From Zootoca vivipara (Eukaryota), in NCBI RefSeq assembly GCF_963506605.1, contig NC_083287.1, forward strand, positions 18,476,001-18,540,000: a stretch of 64,000 nt of DNA, read 5' to 3'. The number at the start of each line of letters is the position of its first letter. Within the stretch, counting starts at the first letter, position 1. The notes beneath the pieces are model-generated. The model was not told the DNA's origin. It did not search any database and saw nothing but the letters and a program-made list of their open reading frames with translations. Shown here piece after piece: positions 33,722 through 41,800 of the stretch. Made by a program: the position numbers and the translations under genes.

Positions 33722-33930
33722 ACAAAGCGCTTTATATCATATAATATAAAGCGGATTGTGGTAGGGCTGTTAAGAAATTTAGCTTAGGGTTTGGTTTGTG
33801 TAAGGCCACAGCTCATGCTGAGTAATGGGGGGCGTGTGTATGCAAATTCCTTGGATCTGATTGGTTGGTGGGGCCCCTCTTAAAGCTGCGTCCACCATTT
33901 TCTGGTCACATTTTTGCCTGGCGTTTGAAC
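33722..33930 (+). repeat. Split direct repeat A1 (209 bp)
   Basis: Identical by eye to 40725-40933. Confidence 0.95.
33815..33902 (+). promoter_or_regulatory. Putative Pol II promoter within repeat A
   Basis: TGCTGAGTAA, GC box GGGGCGTG, octamer ATGCAAAT (33840-33847), CTGATTGG (CCAAT box), CTTAAAG near 33880, CCATTTT. Confidence 0.55.
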
Positions 33931-34816
33931 TGTGTGTTTCTATCGGTTCCTGTCTGGCAAGAGAGCGTTCCTGGATTCCTGGAGTCTGGTTGTATCTGGC
34001 TTATTTAATTTGCTGATTTATTCAGCTTATTGCTTGCTTTTGATTTTTAGCTTTCATTTACTGCCTTATTTAGCTCCGTTTTGATTCTCCCCCTCCCCTC
34101 CCTCCCCACTCCCTTCCCCTACGGCTCGGCCTCGGCTAGGGGCGTTGGGAGTCCCCCCCCCCCGCACAGGCATCCCACTTTATTTAAAGGGCGCACCCCC
34201 CTTTAGATTCCTTTAAATTCTTTAAATTCCCCCCCCCGCTTGCCTTGGCTAGCCTGCTGTGGCTCTTGGTGGGCAAGGGGGCCTTGGTACCCTGAGGGAG
34301 CCTTGGCTCCTGGCTCCTTGCCTGGCCGTTTTCCTGCTGGGGCTGGGCTGGGCTGGGCTGGAGCCACGTGGGTGGTTAATAGGGCTGTTGCCGGCTGAGG
34401 AGCATTGAGGCTGCTTGCGCTCTGCTGGGGGCCTCTAATTTGGCTTATTGGGGGCTGTGGCGTTTGCCGCCCCCCCTGGGGTGCCTGCGGGGTGGGGGTG
34501 CATCATTGGGAGGGCGCCAGGCCGTTATTGTGCCTGGTTTGCACGCTGCGTCCGCCATTTTAATGCTTGCAACCCCCTTTGCTATTAAGCAGAGAGCTGC
34601 TGCTTGTGCATTGGGGGGAGCGGTTTGAGGGGGGTTGCTGGGTCTTTAGGACCTTGGGAGGGGGTCCCCTCACTTGATTCACCTGGGGGGCCTCTAGTTT
34701 TTGTGTCCTGTATAGCGTTTGTTTTCTGTTTGCATCTGTTTTAGCTGAGGAAAATTTTTTTTCCTGGCTGCAGTTTATTTCGAGGCTTGAGTGCTTGCAG
34801 CCAGTTTCTGGGCGTT

Positions 34817-34850
34817 TGGCGCCATCTACTGGCCACGAGTTGTTACTACA
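34817..34850 (-). promoter_or_regulatory. Putative CTCF site (core plus upstream motif)
   Basis: Minus strand TGTAGTAAC-N6-TGGCCAGTAGATGGCGCCA. Confidence 0.55.
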
Positions 34851-35648
34851 CCTACAAATTTAATTGCCTTTTCCCTCAGCCTATATTGAAGTCCCTTGAG
34901 CAGGCTTTGACTTTATTGTGTTGCCTGACTAGCTTATTGGGTCATTTTAACTTATTGGTTTCCTTTAATTACTTGATTTAATTTATATCCTTTTATTTAG
35001 GAATCTTAATTGATTCCATTGGATTATAATTGGCTTTGACCTGCGTGGGCTTGCTTTGGTTAAGTGAAAGGAAAAAACTTTTACTCCTTGCCTTTAATTG
35101 GAGGCCTGAGTACTGCAGCCTACTTTAGGTTCTCTATGCCATCGGCTGGCCTCAAGGGGGTTATCGCACCTTGTTAGTTTTGATACTGTTCCTTCCCAAT
35201 AGATAGGGAATACATTGCTTGGCCTGCGTTTTGGGTTTCTTGCATTGTTTAATTGGCTTAATTGATGTCCATTGTTTAATTCAATTTAATTTTAATTCAC
35301 GTTAATTTAGTTTTCACGTATTCTGGTTAAGGATTCTATTTGGTTGCGTGGGTGGGAGTTTGGCTTTGGCCTGCGCATTTCCCTCTCCCTCCCTTTTAGG
35401 GGGGGGGCCGGGGCGTGTGCCGGGGTCCGGCCTACACCAGCCTGCAATACAAGTCTAACTGATTTCCCTGGGGCCTTTCAGAGGCCTGGGTGTCCCCAAA
35501 TATTTTGCAGTTAGTTTTGCAGATTGGTTGGGAAGGCTCCAATATTTGAGGGGTGGGGTGACGCCGCCTAGTGGTTAAAGTGGTAATACGCACCCCTGTG
35601 TGATTCCACGTGTGTTTGCTTGTTATTCCAAGTAGTTAATAGTTCAGG

Positions 35649-37332
35649 ATGGCGGCCCACCCATCCACTTCAGGGAAATCTAAGAGGGTCATTAAGGGCG
35701 CTTCGCAGAAGCTGCGTTCGCCAGCCTCGCAGGCAGCGGGTCGCGTGGAAGCATTCATCGCTAGCATTGCTGGTGACCCACAGGCCCTGGCCCAGCTTGG
35801 ATCTGGGCTTGATGCCTTATTACAGAACCCGGCCTCTCATCCTGCCGCCTCGACCTCTGCTGGTTTACCTCTGGAAGCAGGGCGGGAGGCGGCGACTACG
35901 GCCATGCCTCCAGACCGGCAAGGCCCAGACCCTCTTTCTGCCCCCTCTACCTCTGCAGGTGTATCCCTGGACCCTGGGCAAGCTACGGTGGCGGCGTCGC
36001 AGCCTCTGTCCCCCATGGCGACCATTCTGGGACTGCCTGAGACCACCACGTCTGGGCCAGTTGACTCGTCGGATGACGACTTCGTGGGGCCTTCTGGTGT
36101 TCTGATGCCGAATGCCTCTTCCACTCCTATGGTGGTGCCGGCGCCCCCTCCCGTCAAACGACGAAGTGAGGGGAAGCAGCCTCGGCGCACCAGGAGGGCG
36201 AGGCAGGCTAAGGGCAGAGTAAGTGGGCAAGGGCAGGGGGGGGCGGACGGGGGCCTCCTCTAATGTTGTTGTTTCGCCCGTTGCTCCATCCCAGACTCTT
36301 GCCGTCGCCTCGCGGCGCGAGGGGCTTTCGTCGGCATCCGGCGAGGAAGCCCTCCCAGTGCCGGCTAGAGCGTCGAGTGGCGGAAAACGTCGTCACAAAA
36401 GTCGTTCCAGGAGGCGGGCAAAGAGGCGCAAGGACGATACCTCGGCTTCGACCACCTCAGGTTCGTCCTCTAGCTCCGAGGGTTCTGATCACTCTATGGG
36501 GTTGTACTGGGCTTACGGGGAAGTGGATTCTGGCCTTCCTCGTTGGGCCTGGGCTCGTCGAGCGAATTCGCATCGTGCTCGTTATGGAGCTGTTCAAGAA
36601 TGTCTCGACGGAGAGTTGGTCCCGGAAACCACGGTTTCCACCAACAGTACTAGGGATATTATTCCGGGCAGTCACTTGTCCTCTAAATTGAGGTCTAGGA
36701 TATTGGATGGTAAATAGGTAGACATTTTTGATTTAGCTCCACCAGAGGAGGTGGTCCCTGAGCAAGAAAACGCCCTCGTTGGTACTAAGAAGAAAGGCAG
36801 GGGGAGAAAGGTGGAGCGGACTTTCGAGCGTTGGCTCGATTGTTATCAAGTTTTTTCCGGGGTAGTAGTAGCGGCATATCCCCGCAGGGCTCTACACCTT
36901 ATCGTGTACCAGTCCATCGTAAGGTCAGCATATAACATGGCAGGGGAAGCGGCCGCAATTGCTTCTGATGAAAGATTTCGCAGGCGGGCGTCAAAAATTG
37001 ACACCGCCCGCTTTGACAGGAAAGACTTGGACCTTTGGACCACGTATGTGGCTCCGTCGGTTTCACGGAAACCCGCCGAGCAGCAAAGGGCTGAGACCCA
37101 GCCTTTTAAGGCGGCACCTAAATTGCGCTGCTGGGATTTCAATAAAGGACTGTGTCAGCGCCCGCGGTGTATTTATGCGCACACTTGTGACCGGTGTGGC
37201 GGTAGCCACCCGGCTGTTAACTGCTATGCGGGCCGGCGGCCCTTTCGTGGGGGTCGGGGAGGATTCAGGCAGGCGCCAAGGGGTTCCGCCCCTGCCCTCC
37301 CCGCTCCCCCCGCAGCTTCCACATCAAAGTGA
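35649..37332 (+). pseudogene. Ngaro gag-like ORF1, disrupted
   Basis: ATG at 35649; frameshift near the G8 run at 36236-36243; TAG at 36715-36717 in GK*VDIF; C-terminal zinc finger CWDFNKGLCQRPRCIYAHTCDRCGGSHPAVNC followed by RGG repeats. Confidence 0.82.
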
Positions 37333-38494
37333 ATTGCTTCAGTTAGCTTTTTCTCCCATTAAGTTACCGGCCCTTAAACATTGGTTAGCCTCCTATCCCA
37401 ATATTGAGGCGGCTGCATATCTTCGGGATGGTTTCTCCTTCGGGTTCCGGATTCCGATAGCTTCGGTTCCCCTGGCTAGGAATCCTAGGAATCAGAAGTC
37501 GGTGAGAGAGATGCACGAGGTCGCAAGGCGGAAGGTTAATAAAGAAATAGCCCTCCAGCGCATGGCTGGTCCTTTTGCGTCTCCGCCTTTTCCCAATCTG
37601 CACCTCTCTCCCTTGGGAATCGTCCCCAAGAAGGCTCCGGGTGAGTTTCGGCTCATTCATAATTTGTCTCACCCTAGGGACACGTCCGTGAACGACGTGA
37701 TCCCTCCGGAGCTTTGTACGGTCAAATACGCTTCTCTCGACCAGGCAATTAAAATGATCAGAAAGTTTGGGCCGGGGGCCTTGTTGGCAAAATGTGATAT
37801 CGAATCGGCTTTCCGATTATTACCAATTCATCCGCATGATTTTTGGTTGCTGGGCTTTCAGTTTGAAGGCGCCTATTATTTTGATAAGGCCATGCCAATG
37901 GGCTGCTCCGTAGCCTGTGCGGCCTTCGAGCGCTTATCGCAGGGTGAGAAGGCTGACATGAGGATGTGGCTGGTATTCCTGGAGGAATACAATGGGGTAT
38001 CCTTGTGGCAGGATGTTTTAAACCTGCACAACGATTTCCAAGTGCACTCCGATGCGGCGGGTTCCCTGGGATTTGGTTTGTTTTGGAATGGCAGGTGGTG
38101 CGCACAAAGATGGCCCCCTGCTTGGCGGGACACTGAAATCACGCGGGATTTAACTTTTCTTGAGTTCTTTCCTATAGCAGTTGCAGTCCATATTTGGGTT
38201 GACGACTTCAAGGACCGCCGCGTATGCTTTTGGTCAGATAACCAGGCTGTGGTGACTGTCCTTGCGAAACAATCTTCTAAGTCAACTCGGGTATCGGCTC
38301 TGCTGCGGGCATTCGTGCTGCAGTGCCTGCGTTTTAACATTATTTTCTCTGCGCGTTTTGTCCCGGGCGTGGCCAACGATATAGCTGACGCTTTGTCACG
38401 ATTTCAGATGGAGCGCTTCAGGTCCCTGGTTCCAGACGCACAACATCAGCCGGAGATTTTCCCGGATCGTCTTTGGAACCTTGGCAGCTGCTAG
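36959..38494 (+). pseudogene. Ngaro reverse transcriptase/RNase H with in-frame deletion of the RT catalytic region
   Basis: SPLGIVPKK..FRLIHNLS, AKCDIESAFRLLP and MPMGC present, but no YxDD; RNase H motifs SDA, LEF, SDN and ADALSR intact. Confidence 0.9.
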
Positions 38495-39387
38495 TCTTGC
38501 AGGGAGTAGCTGCTTCTGTTTCCCCCTCTACCCTGCGGGCTTATCAAAAAGCTTGGACTGACTTTTTAACTTTTCGCAGTCAGTCGCTCGCGGTGGAGGG
38601 AGCGGCCCGCCCCTCTTCTTCCCAGGTGCTTCAATATTTGGCACACCTGTTTCACCTGGGAAGGGCTGCCAGGACCATAAAGCTCCAGTCTGCGGCCATT
38701 TCATTTTTCTCGAAATTGTTTTTTAATAGGGACCCTTGCGCCAAATTTGTGGTGCGTAAGGCCATGGAGGGATGGGGTAGGCCTTGTCCTCCCCGTTCCC
38801 CTACCAGGAACCCGATTTCTTTTGATCTTCTCACTAAAATGAGATTGAAGCTTAGGGTGGTGTGTTGGTCTAAATATGAGGCCCGTTTGTTTTCGGCCGC
38901 CTTCTCAGTGGCCTTTTTTGGCGCTTTGAGAATTGGTGAAATTGTAGGGGGTCAGATGCGTCAGGGGGTGCCAGGGGGTTTGCTACTCCAGGACATACGT
39001 CTGTCGCCAACGGAATTGTTAATCACGATTCGGAGTTCCAAGACCGACCAGGCTGGTAAAGGAGCAGTAATGCGACTGCCTGCTACGGGGCAGACGGGCC
39101 CCTGCCCGGTTAAGGACGTAGCCAAATTCTTGGCGGAAAGGCCAGCTGGGGAGGGCCCCTTGTTTGTGCATCAGGATGGTAACCCGATGACTAGGCTGCA
39201 ATTTACTAGAGTTATGAGGAAGGTGATAGCGGCATGCGGTTGCGTGGCCGCTAATTACGCTCCTCATTCCTTTCGCATTGGGGCCGCCACTACGGCGGCC
39301 CACTGGGGTCTTTCGGTTGATGCTATTAAGGATTTGGGCAGGTGGAAATCTGCAGCGTATAGATCTTATGTTCGGAAGCGCTCCTAA
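38473..39387 (+). CDS. Tyrosine recombinase (start uncertain, no ATG)
   Basis: ALRIGE (R), SKTDQ (K), HSFRIG (HxxR), LGRWKS (W), YRSYVR (Y); N-terminal STLRAYQKAW. Confidence 0.92.
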   Translation: MEPWQLLVLQGVAASVSPSTLRAYQKAWTDFLTFRSQSLAVEGAARPSSSQVLQYLAHLFHLGRAARTIKLQSAAISFFSKLFFNRDPCAKFVVRKAMEGWGRPCPPRSPTRNPISFDLLTKMRLKLRVVCWSKYEARLFSAAFSVAFFGALRIGEIVGGQMRQGVPGGLLLQDIRLSPTELLITIRSSKTDQAGKGAVMRLPATGQTGPCPVKDVAKFLAERPAGEGPLFVHQDGNPMTRLQFTRVMRKVIAACGCVAANYAPHSFRIGAATTAAHWGLSVDAIKDLGRWKSAAYRSYVRKRS

Positions 39388-39396
39388 CTTTGTCGT

Positions 39397-39993
39397 TTGT
39401 TTTCCAATGTTTTCCCAGGGCTCGCGGACGTGCACATATGGATGGTGGGACATTCCATAGTCCATTGGGCAGGCCTTCGCGCTGGCCAAACGCCATTGGG
39501 TCCTCGACTTGGCCTTCCATCCAACATCCAAGTGACCTGGATGGGCAAGAGGGGCATGCGCTGGGGGGAGCTTCTCCCTTTGCTGCGGCGCAAAGCCCTC
39601 TTGCTCGGGTGCCCGTCCGCCCTGGTGATCCAGCTGGGAGAAAATGACATCCCCGCTGTGGACCCGTTATCTCTTCGCCTGGCTATCCTACGAGATTTGT
39701 TGGAGATAAGGACTTGGTTCCCTGATACCGTCGTTTTTTGGTCCCAAATGTTGCAGAGGATGCAATGGCGGGGTGATATTCCTCCTCTGGCTGGGGAAAG
39801 AGCTAGGAAGAGGGTTAACAGCGCAGCATCCAAACGGGTGTACGAAATCGGGGGGAGTTTGATTCGTCATCCCGCAATTAATGTTAGAGCCCCGCTTTTA
39901 TATCGGGATGATGGGGTTCACTTATCCCCTGATGGGTATGACATTTGGCTGCGTGATGTGTCTGAGGGTTTAAAAAGTTGGTTAGGTCTCTGA
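39397..39993 (+). CDS. SGNH/GDSL-family hydrolase (start uncertain, probably spliced)
   Basis: Block I VGHSIV, block II GKRG, block III LGEND, block V DGVH. Confidence 0.88.
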   Translation: MFSNVFPGLADVHIWMVGHSIVHWAGLRAGQTPLGPRLGLPSNIQVTWMGKRGMRWGELLPLLRRKALLLGCPSALVIQLGENDIPAVDPLSLRLAILRDLLEIRTWFPDTVVFWSQMLQRMQWRGDIPPLAGERARKRVNSAASKRVYEIGGSLIRHPAINVRAPLLYRDDGVHLSPDGYDIWLRDVSEGLKSWLGL

Positions 39994-40022
39994 GTGTTGG
40001 CGGCAAGCCAGGGCTGGCTTGA

Positions 40023-40728
40023 TTGGCGGTTAGGCTTTTGGTTGGTTAATCGGTTGGTAGAGGGGGTGGCACACGGATGCCTACCCTCACCTCCGTTTGC
40101 TCCATATAGAAGTATTCCGTTAAAGGAATCTCGGGGCTTACACTCTTGTCCTTACCATCCCGCCATTGGCGGGAATGGTGGGCCCAATTTTAAGAGCAAG
40201 AGCCTTGAGGAACATTCTTGGTGAAGGTGAGGAGGGAATGACTGGGCGCAGCCACCTCCTCACTCCCAGGTATGTTTACTTGACTTCCATGCGGAAGTCG
40301 GAGCAGGAACTGTCCAAGCGGACAGTGGTGAGTCCTGTCCTATGGTGACAGCTGATGTGAGTCCTGCCACGTGGGCAGATGAGGTGAGTCCTGTCCAATG
40401 GTGACAGCTGATGTGAGTCCTGCCACGTGGGCAGATGAGGTGAGTCCTGTCCAATGGTGACAGCTGATGTGAGTCCTGCCACGTGGGGCAGATGAGGTGA
40501 GTCCTGTCCTAAGGGGACAGCTGATTGAGTCCTGTCCTGGATGGACAGATGGGGATAGTCCTTCTTTAGGAAGGACGAGTGAATAACCAAAAGCCTAAGC
40601 CAACACTCGGATTAAATTGTGTATTTAATAAAGTTGTGGCCCTAAATTATTTGCCAAAAACCAAACCATAATTCTGTTGTCAGTTGTGAGTTATTTAAGG
40701 TAATTTTCTGGGAAGCCTCGACACACAA
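40023..40728 (+). repeat. Split direct repeat B1 (706 bp)
   Basis: Identical by eye to 41095-41800 (offset 1072); AATAAA at 40627-40632. Confidence 0.95.
40309..40576 (+). repeat. Tandem hairpin array in B1 (alternating 29/27-bp units, 56-bp period)
   Basis: Repeated GTGAGTC-CTGYC-loop-GRCAG. Confidence 0.9.
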
Positions 40729-40933
40729 AGCGCTTTATATCATATAATATAAAGCGGATTGTGGTAGGGCTGTTAAGAAATTTAGCTTAGGGTTTGGTTT
40801 GTGTAAGGCCACAGCTCATGCTGAGTAATGGGGGGCGTGTGTATGCAAATTCCTTGGATCTGATTGGTTGGTGGGGCCCCTCTTAAAGCTGCGTCCACCA
40901 TTTTCTGGTCACATTTTTGCCTGGCGTTTGAAC
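40725..40933 (+). repeat. Split direct repeat A2
   Basis: Copy of 33722-33930; overlaps B1 by ACAA. Confidence 0.95.
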
Positions 40934-41094
40934 CCCTCCCACCCGCCCTTTCTTTCTTGCAGGTTAGCACGACATTGCTATTGCCTTCGGGGCCGCCTGT
41001 ATTCAGGGGTCAGTAGGAATTTTTCCAATTGGCTGATTGGCTGTGCCTCTTGGTTTTCGCCTACTGCGCTAGCAAATTGTCACAACTTGTTAGG

Positions 41095-41800
41095 TTGGCG
41101 GTTAGGCTTTTGGTTGGTTAATCGGTTGGTAGAGGGGGTGGCACACGGATGCCTACCCTCACCTCCGTTTGCTCCATATAGAAGTATTCCGTTAAAGGAA
41201 TCTCGGGGCTTACACTCTTGTCCTTACCATCCCGCCATTGGCGGGAATGGTGGGCCCAATTTTAAGAGCAAGAGCCTTGAGGAACATTCTTGGTGAAGGT
41301 GAGGAGGGAATGACTGGGCGCAGCCACCTCCTCACTCCCAGGTATGTTTACTTGACTTCCATGCGGAAGTCGGAGCAGGAACTGTCCAAGCGGACAGTGG
41401 TGAGTCCTGTCCTATGGTGACAGCTGATGTGAGTCCTGCCACGTGGGCAGATGAGGTGAGTCCTGTCCAATGGTGACAGCTGATGTGAGTCCTGCCACGT
41501 GGGCAGATGAGGTGAGTCCTGTCCAATGGTGACAGCTGATGTGAGTCCTGCCACGTGGGGCAGATGAGGTGAGTCCTGTCCTAAGGGGACAGCTGATTGA
41601 GTCCTGTCCTGGATGGACAGATGGGGATAGTCCTTCTTTAGGAAGGACGAGTGAATAACCAAAAGCCTAAGCCAACACTCGGATTAAATTGTGTATTTAA
41701 TAAAGTTGTGGCCCTAAATTATTTGCCAAAAACCAAACCATAATTCTGTTGTCAGTTGTGAGTTATTTAAGGTAATTTTCTGGGAAGCCTCGACACACAA
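41095..41800 (+). repeat. Split direct repeat B2 (hairpin array at 41381-41648; AATAAA at 41699-41704)
   Basis: Copy of B1; ends in ACAA. Confidence 0.95.

What the first reader, a model, noticed from the sequence alone, without database searches (positions are those of the whole stretch)
40282..40576. Covarying array of nine RNA hairpins in the B repeat of a Ngaro retrotransposon
Seen: nine consecutive CTGYC-loop-GRCAG stems start at 40310, 40335, 40364, 40391, 40420, 40447, 40476, 40504 and 40532. They are joined by conserved (G/T)TGAGTC linkers and bracketed by two more hairpins (GACTTCC/GGAAGTC and GTCCTTC/GAAGGAC). Stems alternate CTGTC/GACAG and CTGCC/GGCAG, a compensatory change, while the loops vary (AAGC, CTATGGT, ACGTG, CAATGGT, TGGAT and others). 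The array recurs in B2. Inference: selection acts on structure rather than sequence, suggesting a multivalent RNA platform for Gag binding or packaging, or a processed small-RNA array. I know of no description of this in DIRS/Ngaro elements. A DNA-level alternative is an enhancer array, since the units contain CACGTG, CAGCTG, CAGATG, TGACAG and TGAGTC.
Basis: partly seen in the sequence, partly recalled or inferred. Interest (0 to 1): 0.85.

Follow-up and report, generated by a model that had tools for sequence, protein, structure and literature searches.

The report
Palindromic tandem repeat in Ngaro tail
A 56-base tandem repeat whose ~28-base modules can each fold into a short hairpin lies in the 3' terminal repeat of a very young lizard Ngaro retrotransposon and is transcribed, but the claimed covariation is a single compensatory change copied by duplication, so an RNA-scaffold role is plausible and unproven.

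Summary
Nine CTGYC-loop-GRCAG inverted repeats, two bracketing 7-bp hairpins and TGAGTC linkers lie in the 706-bp B repeat of an SGNH-type Ngaro element (33722-41800, + strand). They are repeated identically in B2.

The array is a minisatellite. Its core is 3.7 copies of a 56-bp unit made of two 28-bp half-units. All 11 modules keep a 25-29-nt register.

The "covariation" is one U-A to C-G event spread by duplication; the other four stem pairs never vary.

Some evidence favours hairpin potential:
- Arms vary far less than loops and linkers (Fisher p = 0.0004).
- Variants seen in reads of other copies fall mostly in loops.
- One variant has a U·G intermediate.
- The outermost modules pair through different sequences.

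Some evidence goes against it. For the inner units the all-hairpin fold is not the predicted favoured RNA structure.

Sense-strand RNA covers the array. No splicing from the GTGAGT linkers was seen.

My best reading (0.38) is a cis-acting stem-loop platform in the 3' UTR or first-strand cDNA. The rivals are a neutral hairpin-prone minisatellite, an E-box enhancer repeat and a U1-site array. A small-RNA precursor role is rejected. The scan had noted other copies of this Ngaro family in the genome, but not this array.

The parts
33722..41800 (+). Whole Ngaro-type YR retrotransposon (8,079 bp), laid out as A1-[ORFs]-B1-A2-spacer-B2
   Evidence: Self-BLAST repeat map; Pfam hits for RT, YR and SGNH; no other copy in the window
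33722..33930 (+). A1 split direct repeat (209 bp)
   Evidence: 100% identical to 40725-40933
36751..37332 (+). Gag-like ORF with a C-x7-C-x4-C-x3-H motif followed by a C-x2-C-x3-H-x4-C zinc knuckle (knuckle starts at nt 37186)
   Evidence: Translation and motif scan; no Pfam hit
36959..38494 (+). RT-containing ORF
   Evidence: RVT_1 at E = 0.0048, below the Pfam cut-off
38473..39387 (+). Tyrosine recombinase ORF
   Evidence: Phage_integrase at 1.3e-5 and Phage_int_SAM_1 at 2.2e-4
39397..39993 (+). SGNH/GDSL hydrolase ORF, ending 30 nt before B1
   Evidence: Lipase_GDSL_2 at 4e-5; 52-57% identical proteins in Podarcis muralis and Lacerta agilis
40023..40728 (+). B1 split direct repeat (706 bp)
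   Evidence: 100% identical to 41095-41800
40282..40577 (+). The hairpin-module array in B1: 11 modules in a 25-29-nt register (h0, u1-u9, h10)
40327..40538 (+). Homogenised core of the array: 56-bp unit x 3.7 copies (96% matches), made of two 28-29-bp half-units (73%)
   Evidence: TRF; the repeat finder family D1
40282..40299 (+). Bracketing hairpin h0, GACTTCC-ATGC-GGAAGTC (-9.2 kcal/mol). A major subfamily has loop CTTCA with the stem unchanged
   Evidence: variants at 40289 and 40291 plus an insertion after 40292 in 46 of 70 X22 reads and in DNA contigs
40558..40576 (+). Bracketing hairpin h10, GTCCTTC-TTTAG-GAAGGAC. It sits where a 10th unit is expected, and the linker before it matches 9 of 12 bases
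   Evidence: linker comparison made by eye
40627..40632 (+). AATAAA polyadenylation signal, 50 nt downstream of the array (repeated in B2 at 41699-41704)
   Evidence: Sequence
40725..40933 (+). A2 split direct repeat; its first 4 nt (ACAA) overlap the end of B1
40934..41094 (+). Unique 161-bp spacer between A2 and B2 with two ATTGGCTG (CCAAT-box) repeats
   Evidence: RNA reads cross 41094 into the start of B2 (22 reads)
41095..41800 (+). B2 split direct repeat
41354..41649 (+). Identical second copy of the array, in B2

Best explanation
Segment 40282-40577, repeated at 41354-41649, is a minisatellite inside the B split direct repeat, which is the 3' untranslated tail of a very recently inserted SGNH-type Ngaro retrotransposon.

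It consists of 11 modules of about 28 nt. The inner seven are a recently homogenised 56-bp repeat. The outer four are older and more diverged.

Each module carries a short inverted repeat followed by a (G/T)TGAGTC linker. What is held across modules and across family copies is the pairing potential of the arms, together with the linker. The loops change freely in sequence and length.

I therefore read it as a cis-acting array of short stem-loops. It would act in single-stranded nucleic acid: either the sense genomic RNA, where it lies in the 3' UTR 50 nt upstream of AATAAA, or the first-strand cDNA. It would offer many equivalent sites to the element's own machinery.

The most likely partner is the zinc-knuckle Gag-like protein during RNP assembly. 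The RT is the alternative partner. Unit number would drift by slippage.

Shown here:
- the anatomy of the array and its host element;
- its tandem-repeat origin;
- the stability of each hairpin;
- the excess conservation of the arms;
- loop-biased variation among copies;
- transcription of the sense strand.

Inferred:
- that the hairpins form in vivo;
- that their retention is due to selection;
- the identity of the binding partner.
For: - Arm columns vary far less than other columns among the nine units: 2 of 10 against 17 of 19, Fisher p = 0.0004. The two variable arm columns change together, U-A to C-G.
- Loops range from 4 to 8 nt. This is natural for hairpins and awkward for a dimeric DNA-binding site.
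- All 11 modules, including the two bracketing hairpins with unrelated 7-bp stems, keep a 25-29-nt register. h10 sits where a 10th unit should be and pairs through a different sequence.
- I counted nine variant events in reads and contigs of other copies. They are: h0 loop ATGC>CTTCA; 40320 G>A; an AC insertion after 40427 in a loop; 40539 G>A in a loop; 40553 G>A in a linker; a CTGCC-CCAACTG-GGCAG unit; a CTGTCC-CAAGA-GGGCAG unit with a U·G wobble; and a CTGTCC-CTTAGGGT-GGACAG unit.
- Seven of the nine fall in loops, which make up 22% of the bases (binomial p = 0.0006). The single arm change keeps pairing.
- Individual hairpins score -4 to -11 kcal/mol.
- The region folds better than shuffles on both strands: RNA z = -3.0 (+) and -4.2 (-); DNA z = -4.2 (+) and -6.3 (-).
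- 5-bp hairpin density here is the highest in the window, at 11-12 per 300 bp against a median of 3.
- In run X22 the reads lie almost all in one direction, which is the sense strand if the library follows the usual convention. They cover the array at depth 55-87, with zero over YR.
- A Gag-like ORF carries CCCH- and CCHC-type motifs.
Against: - There is only one independent compensatory event. The other four stem pairs never vary, so they say nothing either way.
- The inner units are recent duplicates, at 96% identity.
- The all-local-hairpin fold scores -86.3 kcal/mol, against -98 for the MFE with pairing span limited to 30 nt and -126 for the global MFE. Inner stems have predicted probability 0.05-0.2 in sense RNA even with the span limited to 40 nt.
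- The arm/loop classes were defined after seeing the pattern.
- The variant list is truncated to the best supported rows, and its events may not be independent. The stems-only test gives just p = 0.07.
- The copies seen in a second organism are identical in the array, which shows recency and not constraint.
- No relative from another species could be examined.
- Nothing here shows binding by Gag or RT.
Confidence: 0.38

Rival explanations
1. Neutral, hairpin-prone minisatellite. An ancestral ~28-nt unit happened to hold a 5-bp inverted repeat. Hairpin-forming sequence promotes polymerase or RT slippage, so the unit expanded. Intra-strand template switching and repeat homogenisation keep the arms complementary and produce one-step 'compensatory' changes. 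Exposed loops are mutation hot spots. There is no function for the element.
For: - The tandem-repeat architecture has a 96%-identical core.
- Unit number varies among copies: two joints, one skipping 149 bases and one 117, each with a replaced loop.
- There is only one covarying pair.
- By my own estimate, the chance that a 28-nt unit holds some 5-bp inverted repeat with a 4-8-nt loop is a few per cent, which is not negligible.
- Template switching can create and maintain hairpins and compensatory substitutions without selection (PMC8794818, found).
- RNA structure stimulates RT indels (PMC5737552).
- The inner hairpins are not the favoured predicted fold.
Against: - The outer, older modules have diverged strongly in loops and linkers yet none has lost pairing.
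- h0 and h10 pair through unrelated 7-bp stems in register with the array.
- The TGAGTC linker is conserved in 8 of 9 units, and hairpin-templated repair does not explain that.
Confidence: 0.28
2. DNA-level enhancer or promoter repeat, like the duplicated enhancers in retroviral U3. The 56-bp unit is a cluster of transcription-factor sites, and duplication raises transcription of the element. The sites are E-boxes CAGCTG, CAGATG and CACGTG, a CCAAT box and TGACAG.
For: - There are 11 CANNTG E-boxes in 260 bp, against 1.3 expected from the rest of the window.
- CACGTG occurs 3 times, CAGCTG 4 times and CAGATG 4 times.
- A CAG(C/A)TG E-box overlaps the 3' arm in 8 of 9 units.
- From general knowledge, tandem duplication of 50-100-bp units in terminal repeats is a classic enhancer pattern in retroelements.
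- B lies directly upstream of A in the B1-A2 junction.
- CCAAT boxes also occur in the nearby spacer.
Against: - The motifs that sit in loops are the least conserved parts. CACGTG is in 3 units only and CCAAT in 2.
- Those loop motifs are destroyed in variant copies whose arms stay intact: CCAACTG replaces ACGTG, and an AC insertion breaks CACGTG.
- Inverted arms with 4-8-nt variable spacing do not fit a dimeric site.
- There is no full AP-1 site (0 TGAGTCA).
- The transcription start is unknown, and the RNA data gave no start site near the array.
- Motif calls are pattern matches only.
Confidence: 0.18
3. U1 snRNP-binding array that controls 3'-end formation. The linkers GAG|GUGAGU and GAU|GUGAGU are strong 5'-splice-site look-alikes, exposed between hairpins 60-300 nt upstream of AATAAA. 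U1 bound there would damp cleavage and polyadenylation at the B polyA signal. Known precedents are the 3'-UTR 5'ss-like elements of BPV-1 and HPV-16 late mRNAs. This would favour read-through of B1 or restrict expression.
For: - Seven GTGAGT occur on the sense strand and none on the antisense strand, against 0.06 expected per 260 bp.
- AATAAA lies at 40627-40632.
- No splice joints from these sites appeared despite depth 55-87, as expected for non-spliced U1 sites.
- The mechanism itself is established knowledge recalled from memory. It was not tested here.
Against: - The GT dinucleotide is absent from the edge linkers (TTGAGTC, ATAGTC, GCAGGAA), so the seven copies are one motif multiplied by duplication.
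- B1 and B2 are identical, so the array cannot by itself distinguish the two polyA sites.
- This is a post hoc match among many recognisable motifs.
Confidence: 0.08
4. Accessory binding sites for the element's tyrosine recombinase, like the arm-type sites of phage attP. They would act on the double-stranded circle near the B/A junction.
For: Each module is a pair of short inverted arms around a 4-8-bp spacer. The array ends about 150 bp from the B/A junction at 40725-40728.
Against: - The likely core site at the start of A has 10-bp arms CGCTTTATAT/ATATAAAGCG around a 6-bp spacer. Its sequence bears no resemblance to CTGYC/GRCAG.
- The spacer length between array arms is variable.
- The compensatory arm change would alter a protein-recognition site on both halves.
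Confidence: 0.03
5. Precursor array for processed small RNAs (miRNA-like or siRNA).
For: Both strands are represented in RNA reads, with X21 mostly antisense and X22 sense over the array. Double-stranded RNA is therefore conceivable.
Against: From general knowledge, stems of 5-7 bp are far shorter than Drosha or Dicer substrates need. No small-RNA data were available.
Confidence: 0.01

Closest known systems
Vertebrate Ngaro retrotransposons with an SGNH hydrolase ORF (Goodwin & Poulter 2004; Xenopus DIRS-53_XT/54_XT as described in PMC9210276)
   Same: Split direct repeats A1-[ORFs]-B1-A2-B2. Gag-like, RT, YR and a fourth SGNH ORF after YR.
   Different: The papers I could read describe no tandem or hairpin array in the B repeat. 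This copy also has a 161-bp unique spacer between A2 and B2.
3'-UTR stem-loops recognised by the reverse transcriptase of stringent-type LINEs and their SINE partners (e.g. eel UnaL2; see PMC5135761 for L1/Alu)
   Same: A short hairpin in the 3' tail of the retroelement RNA would serve as a cis recognition signal. B appears more abundant in DNA word depth than the ORFs, which would be expected if non-autonomous copies retain it. The tool warns that word depth is not copy number.
   Different: Those elements have one defined stem-loop at the very 3' end, not 11 reiterated modules. Ngaro replication goes through a YR and a circle, not target-primed reverse transcription. RT binding was not tested here.
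Retroviral and LTR-retrotransposon packaging signals bound by zinc-knuckle nucleocapsid (clusters of stem-loops with exposed G/U-rich single strands)
   Same: Several short stem-loops separated by UG-rich single strands. The element encodes a CCHC-type knuckle.
   Different: Classical packaging signals lie in the 5' leader, are not tandem repeats and have longer, distinct stems. This comparison is an analogy from memory only.
Duplicated enhancer repeats in retroviral U3 (e.g. the ~75-bp repeats of murine leukaemia viruses)
   Same: A tandem 50-100-bp unit inside a terminal repeat, dense in transcription-factor motifs, with unit number varying among copies.
   Different: Here the conserved parts are inverted arms and a linker, and the loop-borne motifs are variable. 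The position relative to the transcription start is unknown.
5'-splice-site-like negative elements in papillomavirus late 3' UTRs (BPV-1; the HPV-16 late regulatory element)
   Same: Several 5'ss consensus motifs in a terminal 3' UTR shortly upstream of a polyA signal, not used for splicing.
   Different: Here there are seven identical strong sites embedded in a hairpin repeat. U1 binding is untested, and the edge linkers lack the GT.

Membership tests
Ngaro (DIRS-order YR retrotransposon with split direct repeats) | A1-[internal]-B1-A2-B2 repeats with A1=A2 and B1=B2 | tested here: met
   A is 209 bp and B is 706 bp, both at 100% identity. A 161-bp unique spacer lies between A2 and B2.
Ngaro (DIRS-order YR retrotransposon with split direct repeats) | Encodes a tyrosine recombinase instead of a DDE integrase | tested here: met
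   Phage_integrase at E = 1.3e-5 and the SAM-like N-domain at 2.2e-4, both just under the Pfam gathering scores.
Ngaro (DIRS-order YR retrotransposon with split direct repeats) | Reverse transcriptase / RNase H ORF | tested here: inconclusive
   RVT_1 at E = 0.0048, 17 bits against a cut-off of 29.6. No deeper search was run.
Ngaro (DIRS-order YR retrotransposon with split direct repeats) | Vertebrate subgroup: an extra SGNH hydrolase ORF after YR | tested here: met
   Lipase_GDSL_2 at 4e-5. Lacertid homologues at 52-57% identity. The feature is described in PMC9210276.
Evolutionarily supported structured RNA element | Several independent compensatory base-pair changes | tested here: not met
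   One covarying pair among 5; four pairs are invariant. One U·G intermediate appears in a single DNA contig.
Evolutionarily supported structured RNA element | Proposed structure is the thermodynamically favoured fold | tested here: inconclusive
   The outer hairpins have probability 0.8-1.0 and the inner ones 0.05-0.5. The all-local fold scores -86 against an MFE of -126 kcal/mol. The local hairpins dominate only for the minus strand folded as ssDNA.
Evolutionarily supported structured RNA element | Conserved in related elements of other species | not testable with these tools
The metagenome scans found nothing. The viral scan found only an unrelated integrase. Contigs from the second organism are identical.
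Evolutionarily supported structured RNA element | Match to a curated RNA family | tested here: not met
   No Rfam hit in the array at E <= 1.
Tandem enhancer repeat of a retroelement terminal repeat | Tandemly duplicated unit dense in transcription-factor motifs | tested here: met
   56-bp unit x 3.7 copies. 11 E-boxes against 1.3 expected. These are pattern matches only.
Tandem enhancer repeat of a retroelement terminal repeat | Orientation-independent activation of transcription; factor occupancy | not testable with these tools
   This needs reporter and chromatin assays.
miRNA/siRNA precursor hairpins | Stem of about 20 bp or more | tested here: not met
   Stems are 5-7 bp.
U1-binding 3'-UTR regulatory element | Unspliced 5'ss consensus motifs upstream of a polyA signal in the terminal exon | tested here: met
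   7 GTGAGT motifs, sense strand only. AATAAA at 40627. No joints from these sites.
U1-binding 3'-UTR regulatory element | U1 snRNP binding and an effect on polyadenylation | not testable with these tools
   This is a biochemical and reporter test.
Tyrosine-recombinase binding sites | Arms resembling the core-site arms at the recombination junction | tested here: not met
   The A-start palindrome arms CGCTTTATAT are unrelated to CTGYC.

The most novel reading that the evidence does not exclude
The array is a selected, multivalent single-stranded nucleic-acid scaffold peculiar to this Ngaro lineage. About 11 short stem-loops lie in a ~28-nt register, and alternating stem identities limit mispairing between neighbouring modules. 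Exposed GUGAGUC linkers would recruit many copies of one partner to the 3' tail of the genomic RNA or to the first-strand cDNA. The partner would be the element's CCCH/CCHC Gag-like protein, its RT, or host U1 snRNP. This would be the first defined cis-acting replication signal in a YR retrotransposon.
Probability: 0.3. Interest if true: 0.65.

Novelty: new member of a known kind. Interest (0 to 1): 0.4.

Why it matters
As far as I could find in the searched literature, no cis-acting signal for RNA packaging, reverse-transcription priming or strand transfer has been defined for any DIRS or Ngaro element.

This is a young, multi-copy family that is still transcribed, and it carries a compact, easily mutated candidate element in its 3' repeat. 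That makes it a practical entry point. The same 250 nt can be tested as RNA structure, as a Gag or RT ligand, as an enhancer and as a U1 or polyA regulator.

If the array turns out to be neutral, it is still a clean natural example of how tandem duplication and template switching can imitate covariation. That is a caution for sequence-only structure calls in repeats.

Tried and rejected
- Exact-pattern scan of metagenome contigs for two consecutive modules: 0 hits.
- Protein-profile scan of metagenome contigs with the SGNH alignment: no relative.
- YR protein against viral contigs: only a 28%-identical integrase on a viral contig, irrelevant here.
- Rfam at E <= 1 over the whole element: nothing in the array.
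- Earlier scan notes by place, words and sequence: other Ngaro copies are noted, but nothing on this array.
- Coding reading: the 104-aa minus-strand ORF across the array has no Pfam match. By my reading of the sequence it exists because the minus strand of the repeat lacks stop codons, and the plus strand has TGA in every unit. The period of 56 is not a multiple of 3.
- Small-RNA precursor: rejected on stem length.
- YR accessory sites: the arms are unlike the junction palindrome.
- Long-range partner for the linker: no complement of GTGAGTCCTG occurs inside the element.
- Splice use of the GTGAGT linkers: no joints were reported at depth 55-87.
- Start, end and polyA inference from RNA reads: confounded by many diverged copies and by B1 = B2, so no claim is made.
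Full report
**Host element.** The window holds one complete YR retrotransposon on the + strand, at 33722-41800.
- Self-comparison gives A1 33722-33930 = A2 40725-40933 (209 bp, 100%) and B1 40023-40728 = B2 41095-41800 (706 bp, 100%).
- B1 and A2 overlap by ACAA. A unique 161-bp spacer (40934-41094) separates A2 from B2.
- The ORFs give weak but coherent Pfam hits: RVT_1 (36959-38494), Phage_integrase plus its SAM-like N-domain (38473-39387) and a GDSL/SGNH hydrolase (39397-39993).
- A Gag-like ORF (36751-37332) carries a CCCH-type motif followed by a CCHC-type knuckle.
- An SGNH ORF after YR is the described hallmark of vertebrate Ngaro elements (PMC9210276).
- The nearest proteins in the databases are 52-57% identical, from Podarcis muralis and Lacerta agilis.
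- Identical repeats point to a very recent insertion. Earlier scan notes list other young copies of Ngaro elements in this genome. The window has no second copy.

**The observation.**
- The pattern CTGYC-N3-9-GRCAG occurs 9 times in each array and only 3 times elsewhere in the 64 kb.
- TGAGTC occurs 8 times in the array, against 0.06 expected per 260 bp.
- GTGAGTCCTG, allowing one mismatch, occurs 8 times in each array. The window total is 20, against 2.75 expected.
- 5-bp hairpin density is the highest in the window.

**What it is structurally.**
- It is a tandem repeat. TRF finds a 56-bp unit x 3.7 copies at 96% identity, which resolves into two half-units of 28-29 bp that are 73% alike.
- One half-unit type carries CTGTC-CAATGGT-GACAG-CTGAT. 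The other carries CTGCC-ACGTG-GGCAG-ATGAG.
- The edge units u1, u2, u8 and u9 are more diverged.
- With the bracketing hairpins included, there are 11 modules with start-to-start spacings of 28, 25, 29, 27, 29, 27, 29, 28, 28 and 26 nt.
- The linker before the last hairpin matches the usual linker at 9 of 12 bases, by eye. That hairpin is therefore plausibly a decayed tenth unit that pairs through a different sequence, GTCCTTC/GAAGGAC.

**The covariation claim.**
- On the alignment of the nine units (seven distinct rows), the 5-bp stem is 100% paired.
- Four pairs never vary. The fourth pair is U-A in five rows and C-G in two. 23 of 500 shuffles reach the observed score.
- The C-G units are copies of one another through the 56-bp duplication, so this is a single compensatory event, not an array-wide signal.

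**Evidence that still favours hairpin potential.**
- Arm columns are much less variable than the rest: 2 of 10 against 17 of 19, Fisher p = 0.0004.
- Loops differ in both sequence and length, from 4 to 8 nt.
- Reads and contigs from other copies add nine variant events:
  - the h0 loop ATGC>CTTCA, seen in 46 of 70 RNA reads and in DNA contigs;
  - 40320 G>A;
  - an AC insertion after 40427 that breaks CACGTG;
  - 40539 G>A;
  - 40553 G>A;
  - a unit CTGCC-CCAACTG-GGCAG, in an array two units shorter;
  - a unit CTGTCC-CAAGA-GGGCAG, which has a U·G wobble, the expected intermediate between U-A and C-G;
  - a unit CTGTCC-CTTAGGGT-GGACAG.
- Seven of the nine events lie in loops, which make up 22% of the bases (p = 0.0006). 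One lies in an arm and preserves pairing. The stems-only test is weak at p = 0.07.
- Caveats: the tool lists only the best supported differences, the events may be linked, and the site classes were defined after the fact.

**Folding.**
- Single modules fold at -4 to -11 kcal/mol.
- The 311-nt region folds better than dinucleotide shuffles on both strands: RNA z = -3.0 (+) and -4.2 (-); DNA z = -4.2 (+) and -6.3 (-).
- The nine-hairpin picture is not the favoured prediction for the sense RNA. The all-local structure scores -86.3 kcal/mol, against -98.1 with a 30-nt span limit and -126.2 for the global MFE.
- In sense RNA, modules u2-u6 have stem probabilities of 0.05-0.2 and u7 0.47, even with a 40-nt span limit. 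h0, u1, u8 and u9 are robust at 0.8-1.0.
- The 3' arm of one unit can pair with the 5' arm of the next. The alternation of stem types makes this a mismatch at one junction type and a G·U pair at the other (inference from the sequence).
- The local hairpins are best predicted for the minus strand folded as ssDNA, which is the polarity of first-strand cDNA.

**Expression (about 6% of each RNA run was read).**
- In X22 the reads lie almost all in one direction. This corresponds to sense RNA if the library follows the usual stranded convention.
- In X22 they cover B at depth 44-87, the SGNH ORF at 2-19 and YR at 0.
- 22 reads cross from the spacer into B2, so much of this RNA does not come from full-length genomic transcripts of copies like this one.
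- In X21 the array carries mostly opposite-direction reads (10-16, against 3-9).
- No joint starts at any GTGAGT linker.
- DNA word depth is several-fold higher over B than over the ORFs. This suggests B-bearing non-autonomous or solo copies, but the tool warns that depth is not copy number, and the array's own repetition inflates it.
- Contigs from a second organism match the array with 0-2 differences. That reflects recency and not constraint.

**Alternatives.**
- *Enhancer repeat.* There are 11 E-boxes against 1.3 expected, and a CAG(C/A)TG overlaps the 3' arm in 8 of 9 units. However, the loop-borne motifs CACGTG and CCAAT are the least conserved parts and are lost in variants that keep the arms. 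There is no full AP-1 site.
- *Neutral minisatellite.* Hairpin-prone sequence slips, and template switching can create and maintain hairpins with one-step compensatory changes (PMC8794818; RT indels at structures, PMC5737552). This explains the single covariation. It does not easily explain the conserved linker or the unrelated stems of the outer modules.
- *U1-site array.* Seven strong 5'ss look-alikes lie on the sense strand only, 60-300 nt before AATAAA at 40627-40632, and none is used for splicing. This is a known way to damp polyadenylation in papillomavirus late mRNAs (from memory). However, the edge linkers lack the GT, and B1 = B2.
- *YR accessory sites.* These are unlikely. The probable core site at the start of A has 10-bp arms around CATATA that are unrelated to the array arms.
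- *Small-RNA precursors.* Excluded by stem length.
- *Coding.* Excluded (period 56).

**What could not be done.** The decisive test is covariation and unit structure in relatives. 

**Verdict.** This is a real and tidy feature in a correctly identified host, but it was over-read. My best single reading is a cis-acting stem-loop array in the 3' tail, acting in RNA or first-strand cDNA (0.38). A neutral hairpin-prone minisatellite follows closely (0.28), then an enhancer repeat (0.18). Interest is moderate. The array is a good experimental handle on an obscure transposon class, and nothing yet sets it apart from the common class of TE-internal tandem repeats.

Noticed in passing
window 40731-40756 (also 33728-33753 in A1): The A repeat begins with a perfect 10-bp inverted repeat, CGCTTTATAT / ATATAAAGCG, around a 6-nt spacer CATATA. 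It lies 3 nt inside the B/A junction. The layout is that of a tyrosine-recombinase core site and is a candidate crossover site of the element.
   Followed up: partly
window 40934-41094: A unique 161-bp spacer lies between A2 and B2, which the textbook B1-A2-B2 scheme does not include. It holds two tandem ATTGGCTG (CCAAT-box) copies at 41028-41043. Its 3' half and the first ~125 bp of B show DNA word depth of 80-147k against ~3k for the ORFs. RNA reads run from it into B2. It may be shared with an abundant non-autonomous family, or it may be a promoter.
   Followed up: partly
window 40097-40138: Many X21 RNA reads match only this ~42-nt piece of B and diverge on both sides: 35 loose ends before 40096/40097 and 45 behind 40138. 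DNA depth peaks here. The piece looks shared with another abundant, expressed repeat.
   Followed up: no
window 39397-39993: X22 RNA coverage is zero across YR (38584-39411) and begins in the bin starting at 39412, beside the start of the ATG-less SGNH ORF. This fits earlier scan notes that predict a spliced SGNH mRNA. No acceptor joint was visible in the truncated tables.
   Followed up: no
window 36751-37332: The Gag-like ORF has a C-x7-C-x4-C-x3-H motif directly followed by a C-x2-C-x3-H-x4-C knuckle (nt ~37130-37225). It has no Pfam match.
   Followed up: partly
window 40611-40632: A 7-bp A/T hairpin, ATTAAAT-TGTGT-ATTTAAT, overlaps the AATAAA signal. B as a whole holds about six 7-bp perfect hairpins in 706 bp, against about 1 per kb in the window.
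   Followed up: no
window 33931-35648: About 1.7 kb lies between A1 and the first long ORF with no ORF of 100 aa or more. It contains only small simple repeats such as CTCCCC-rich and CTTTAAATT x3. It may be a long 5' leader or extra cargo.
   Followed up: no
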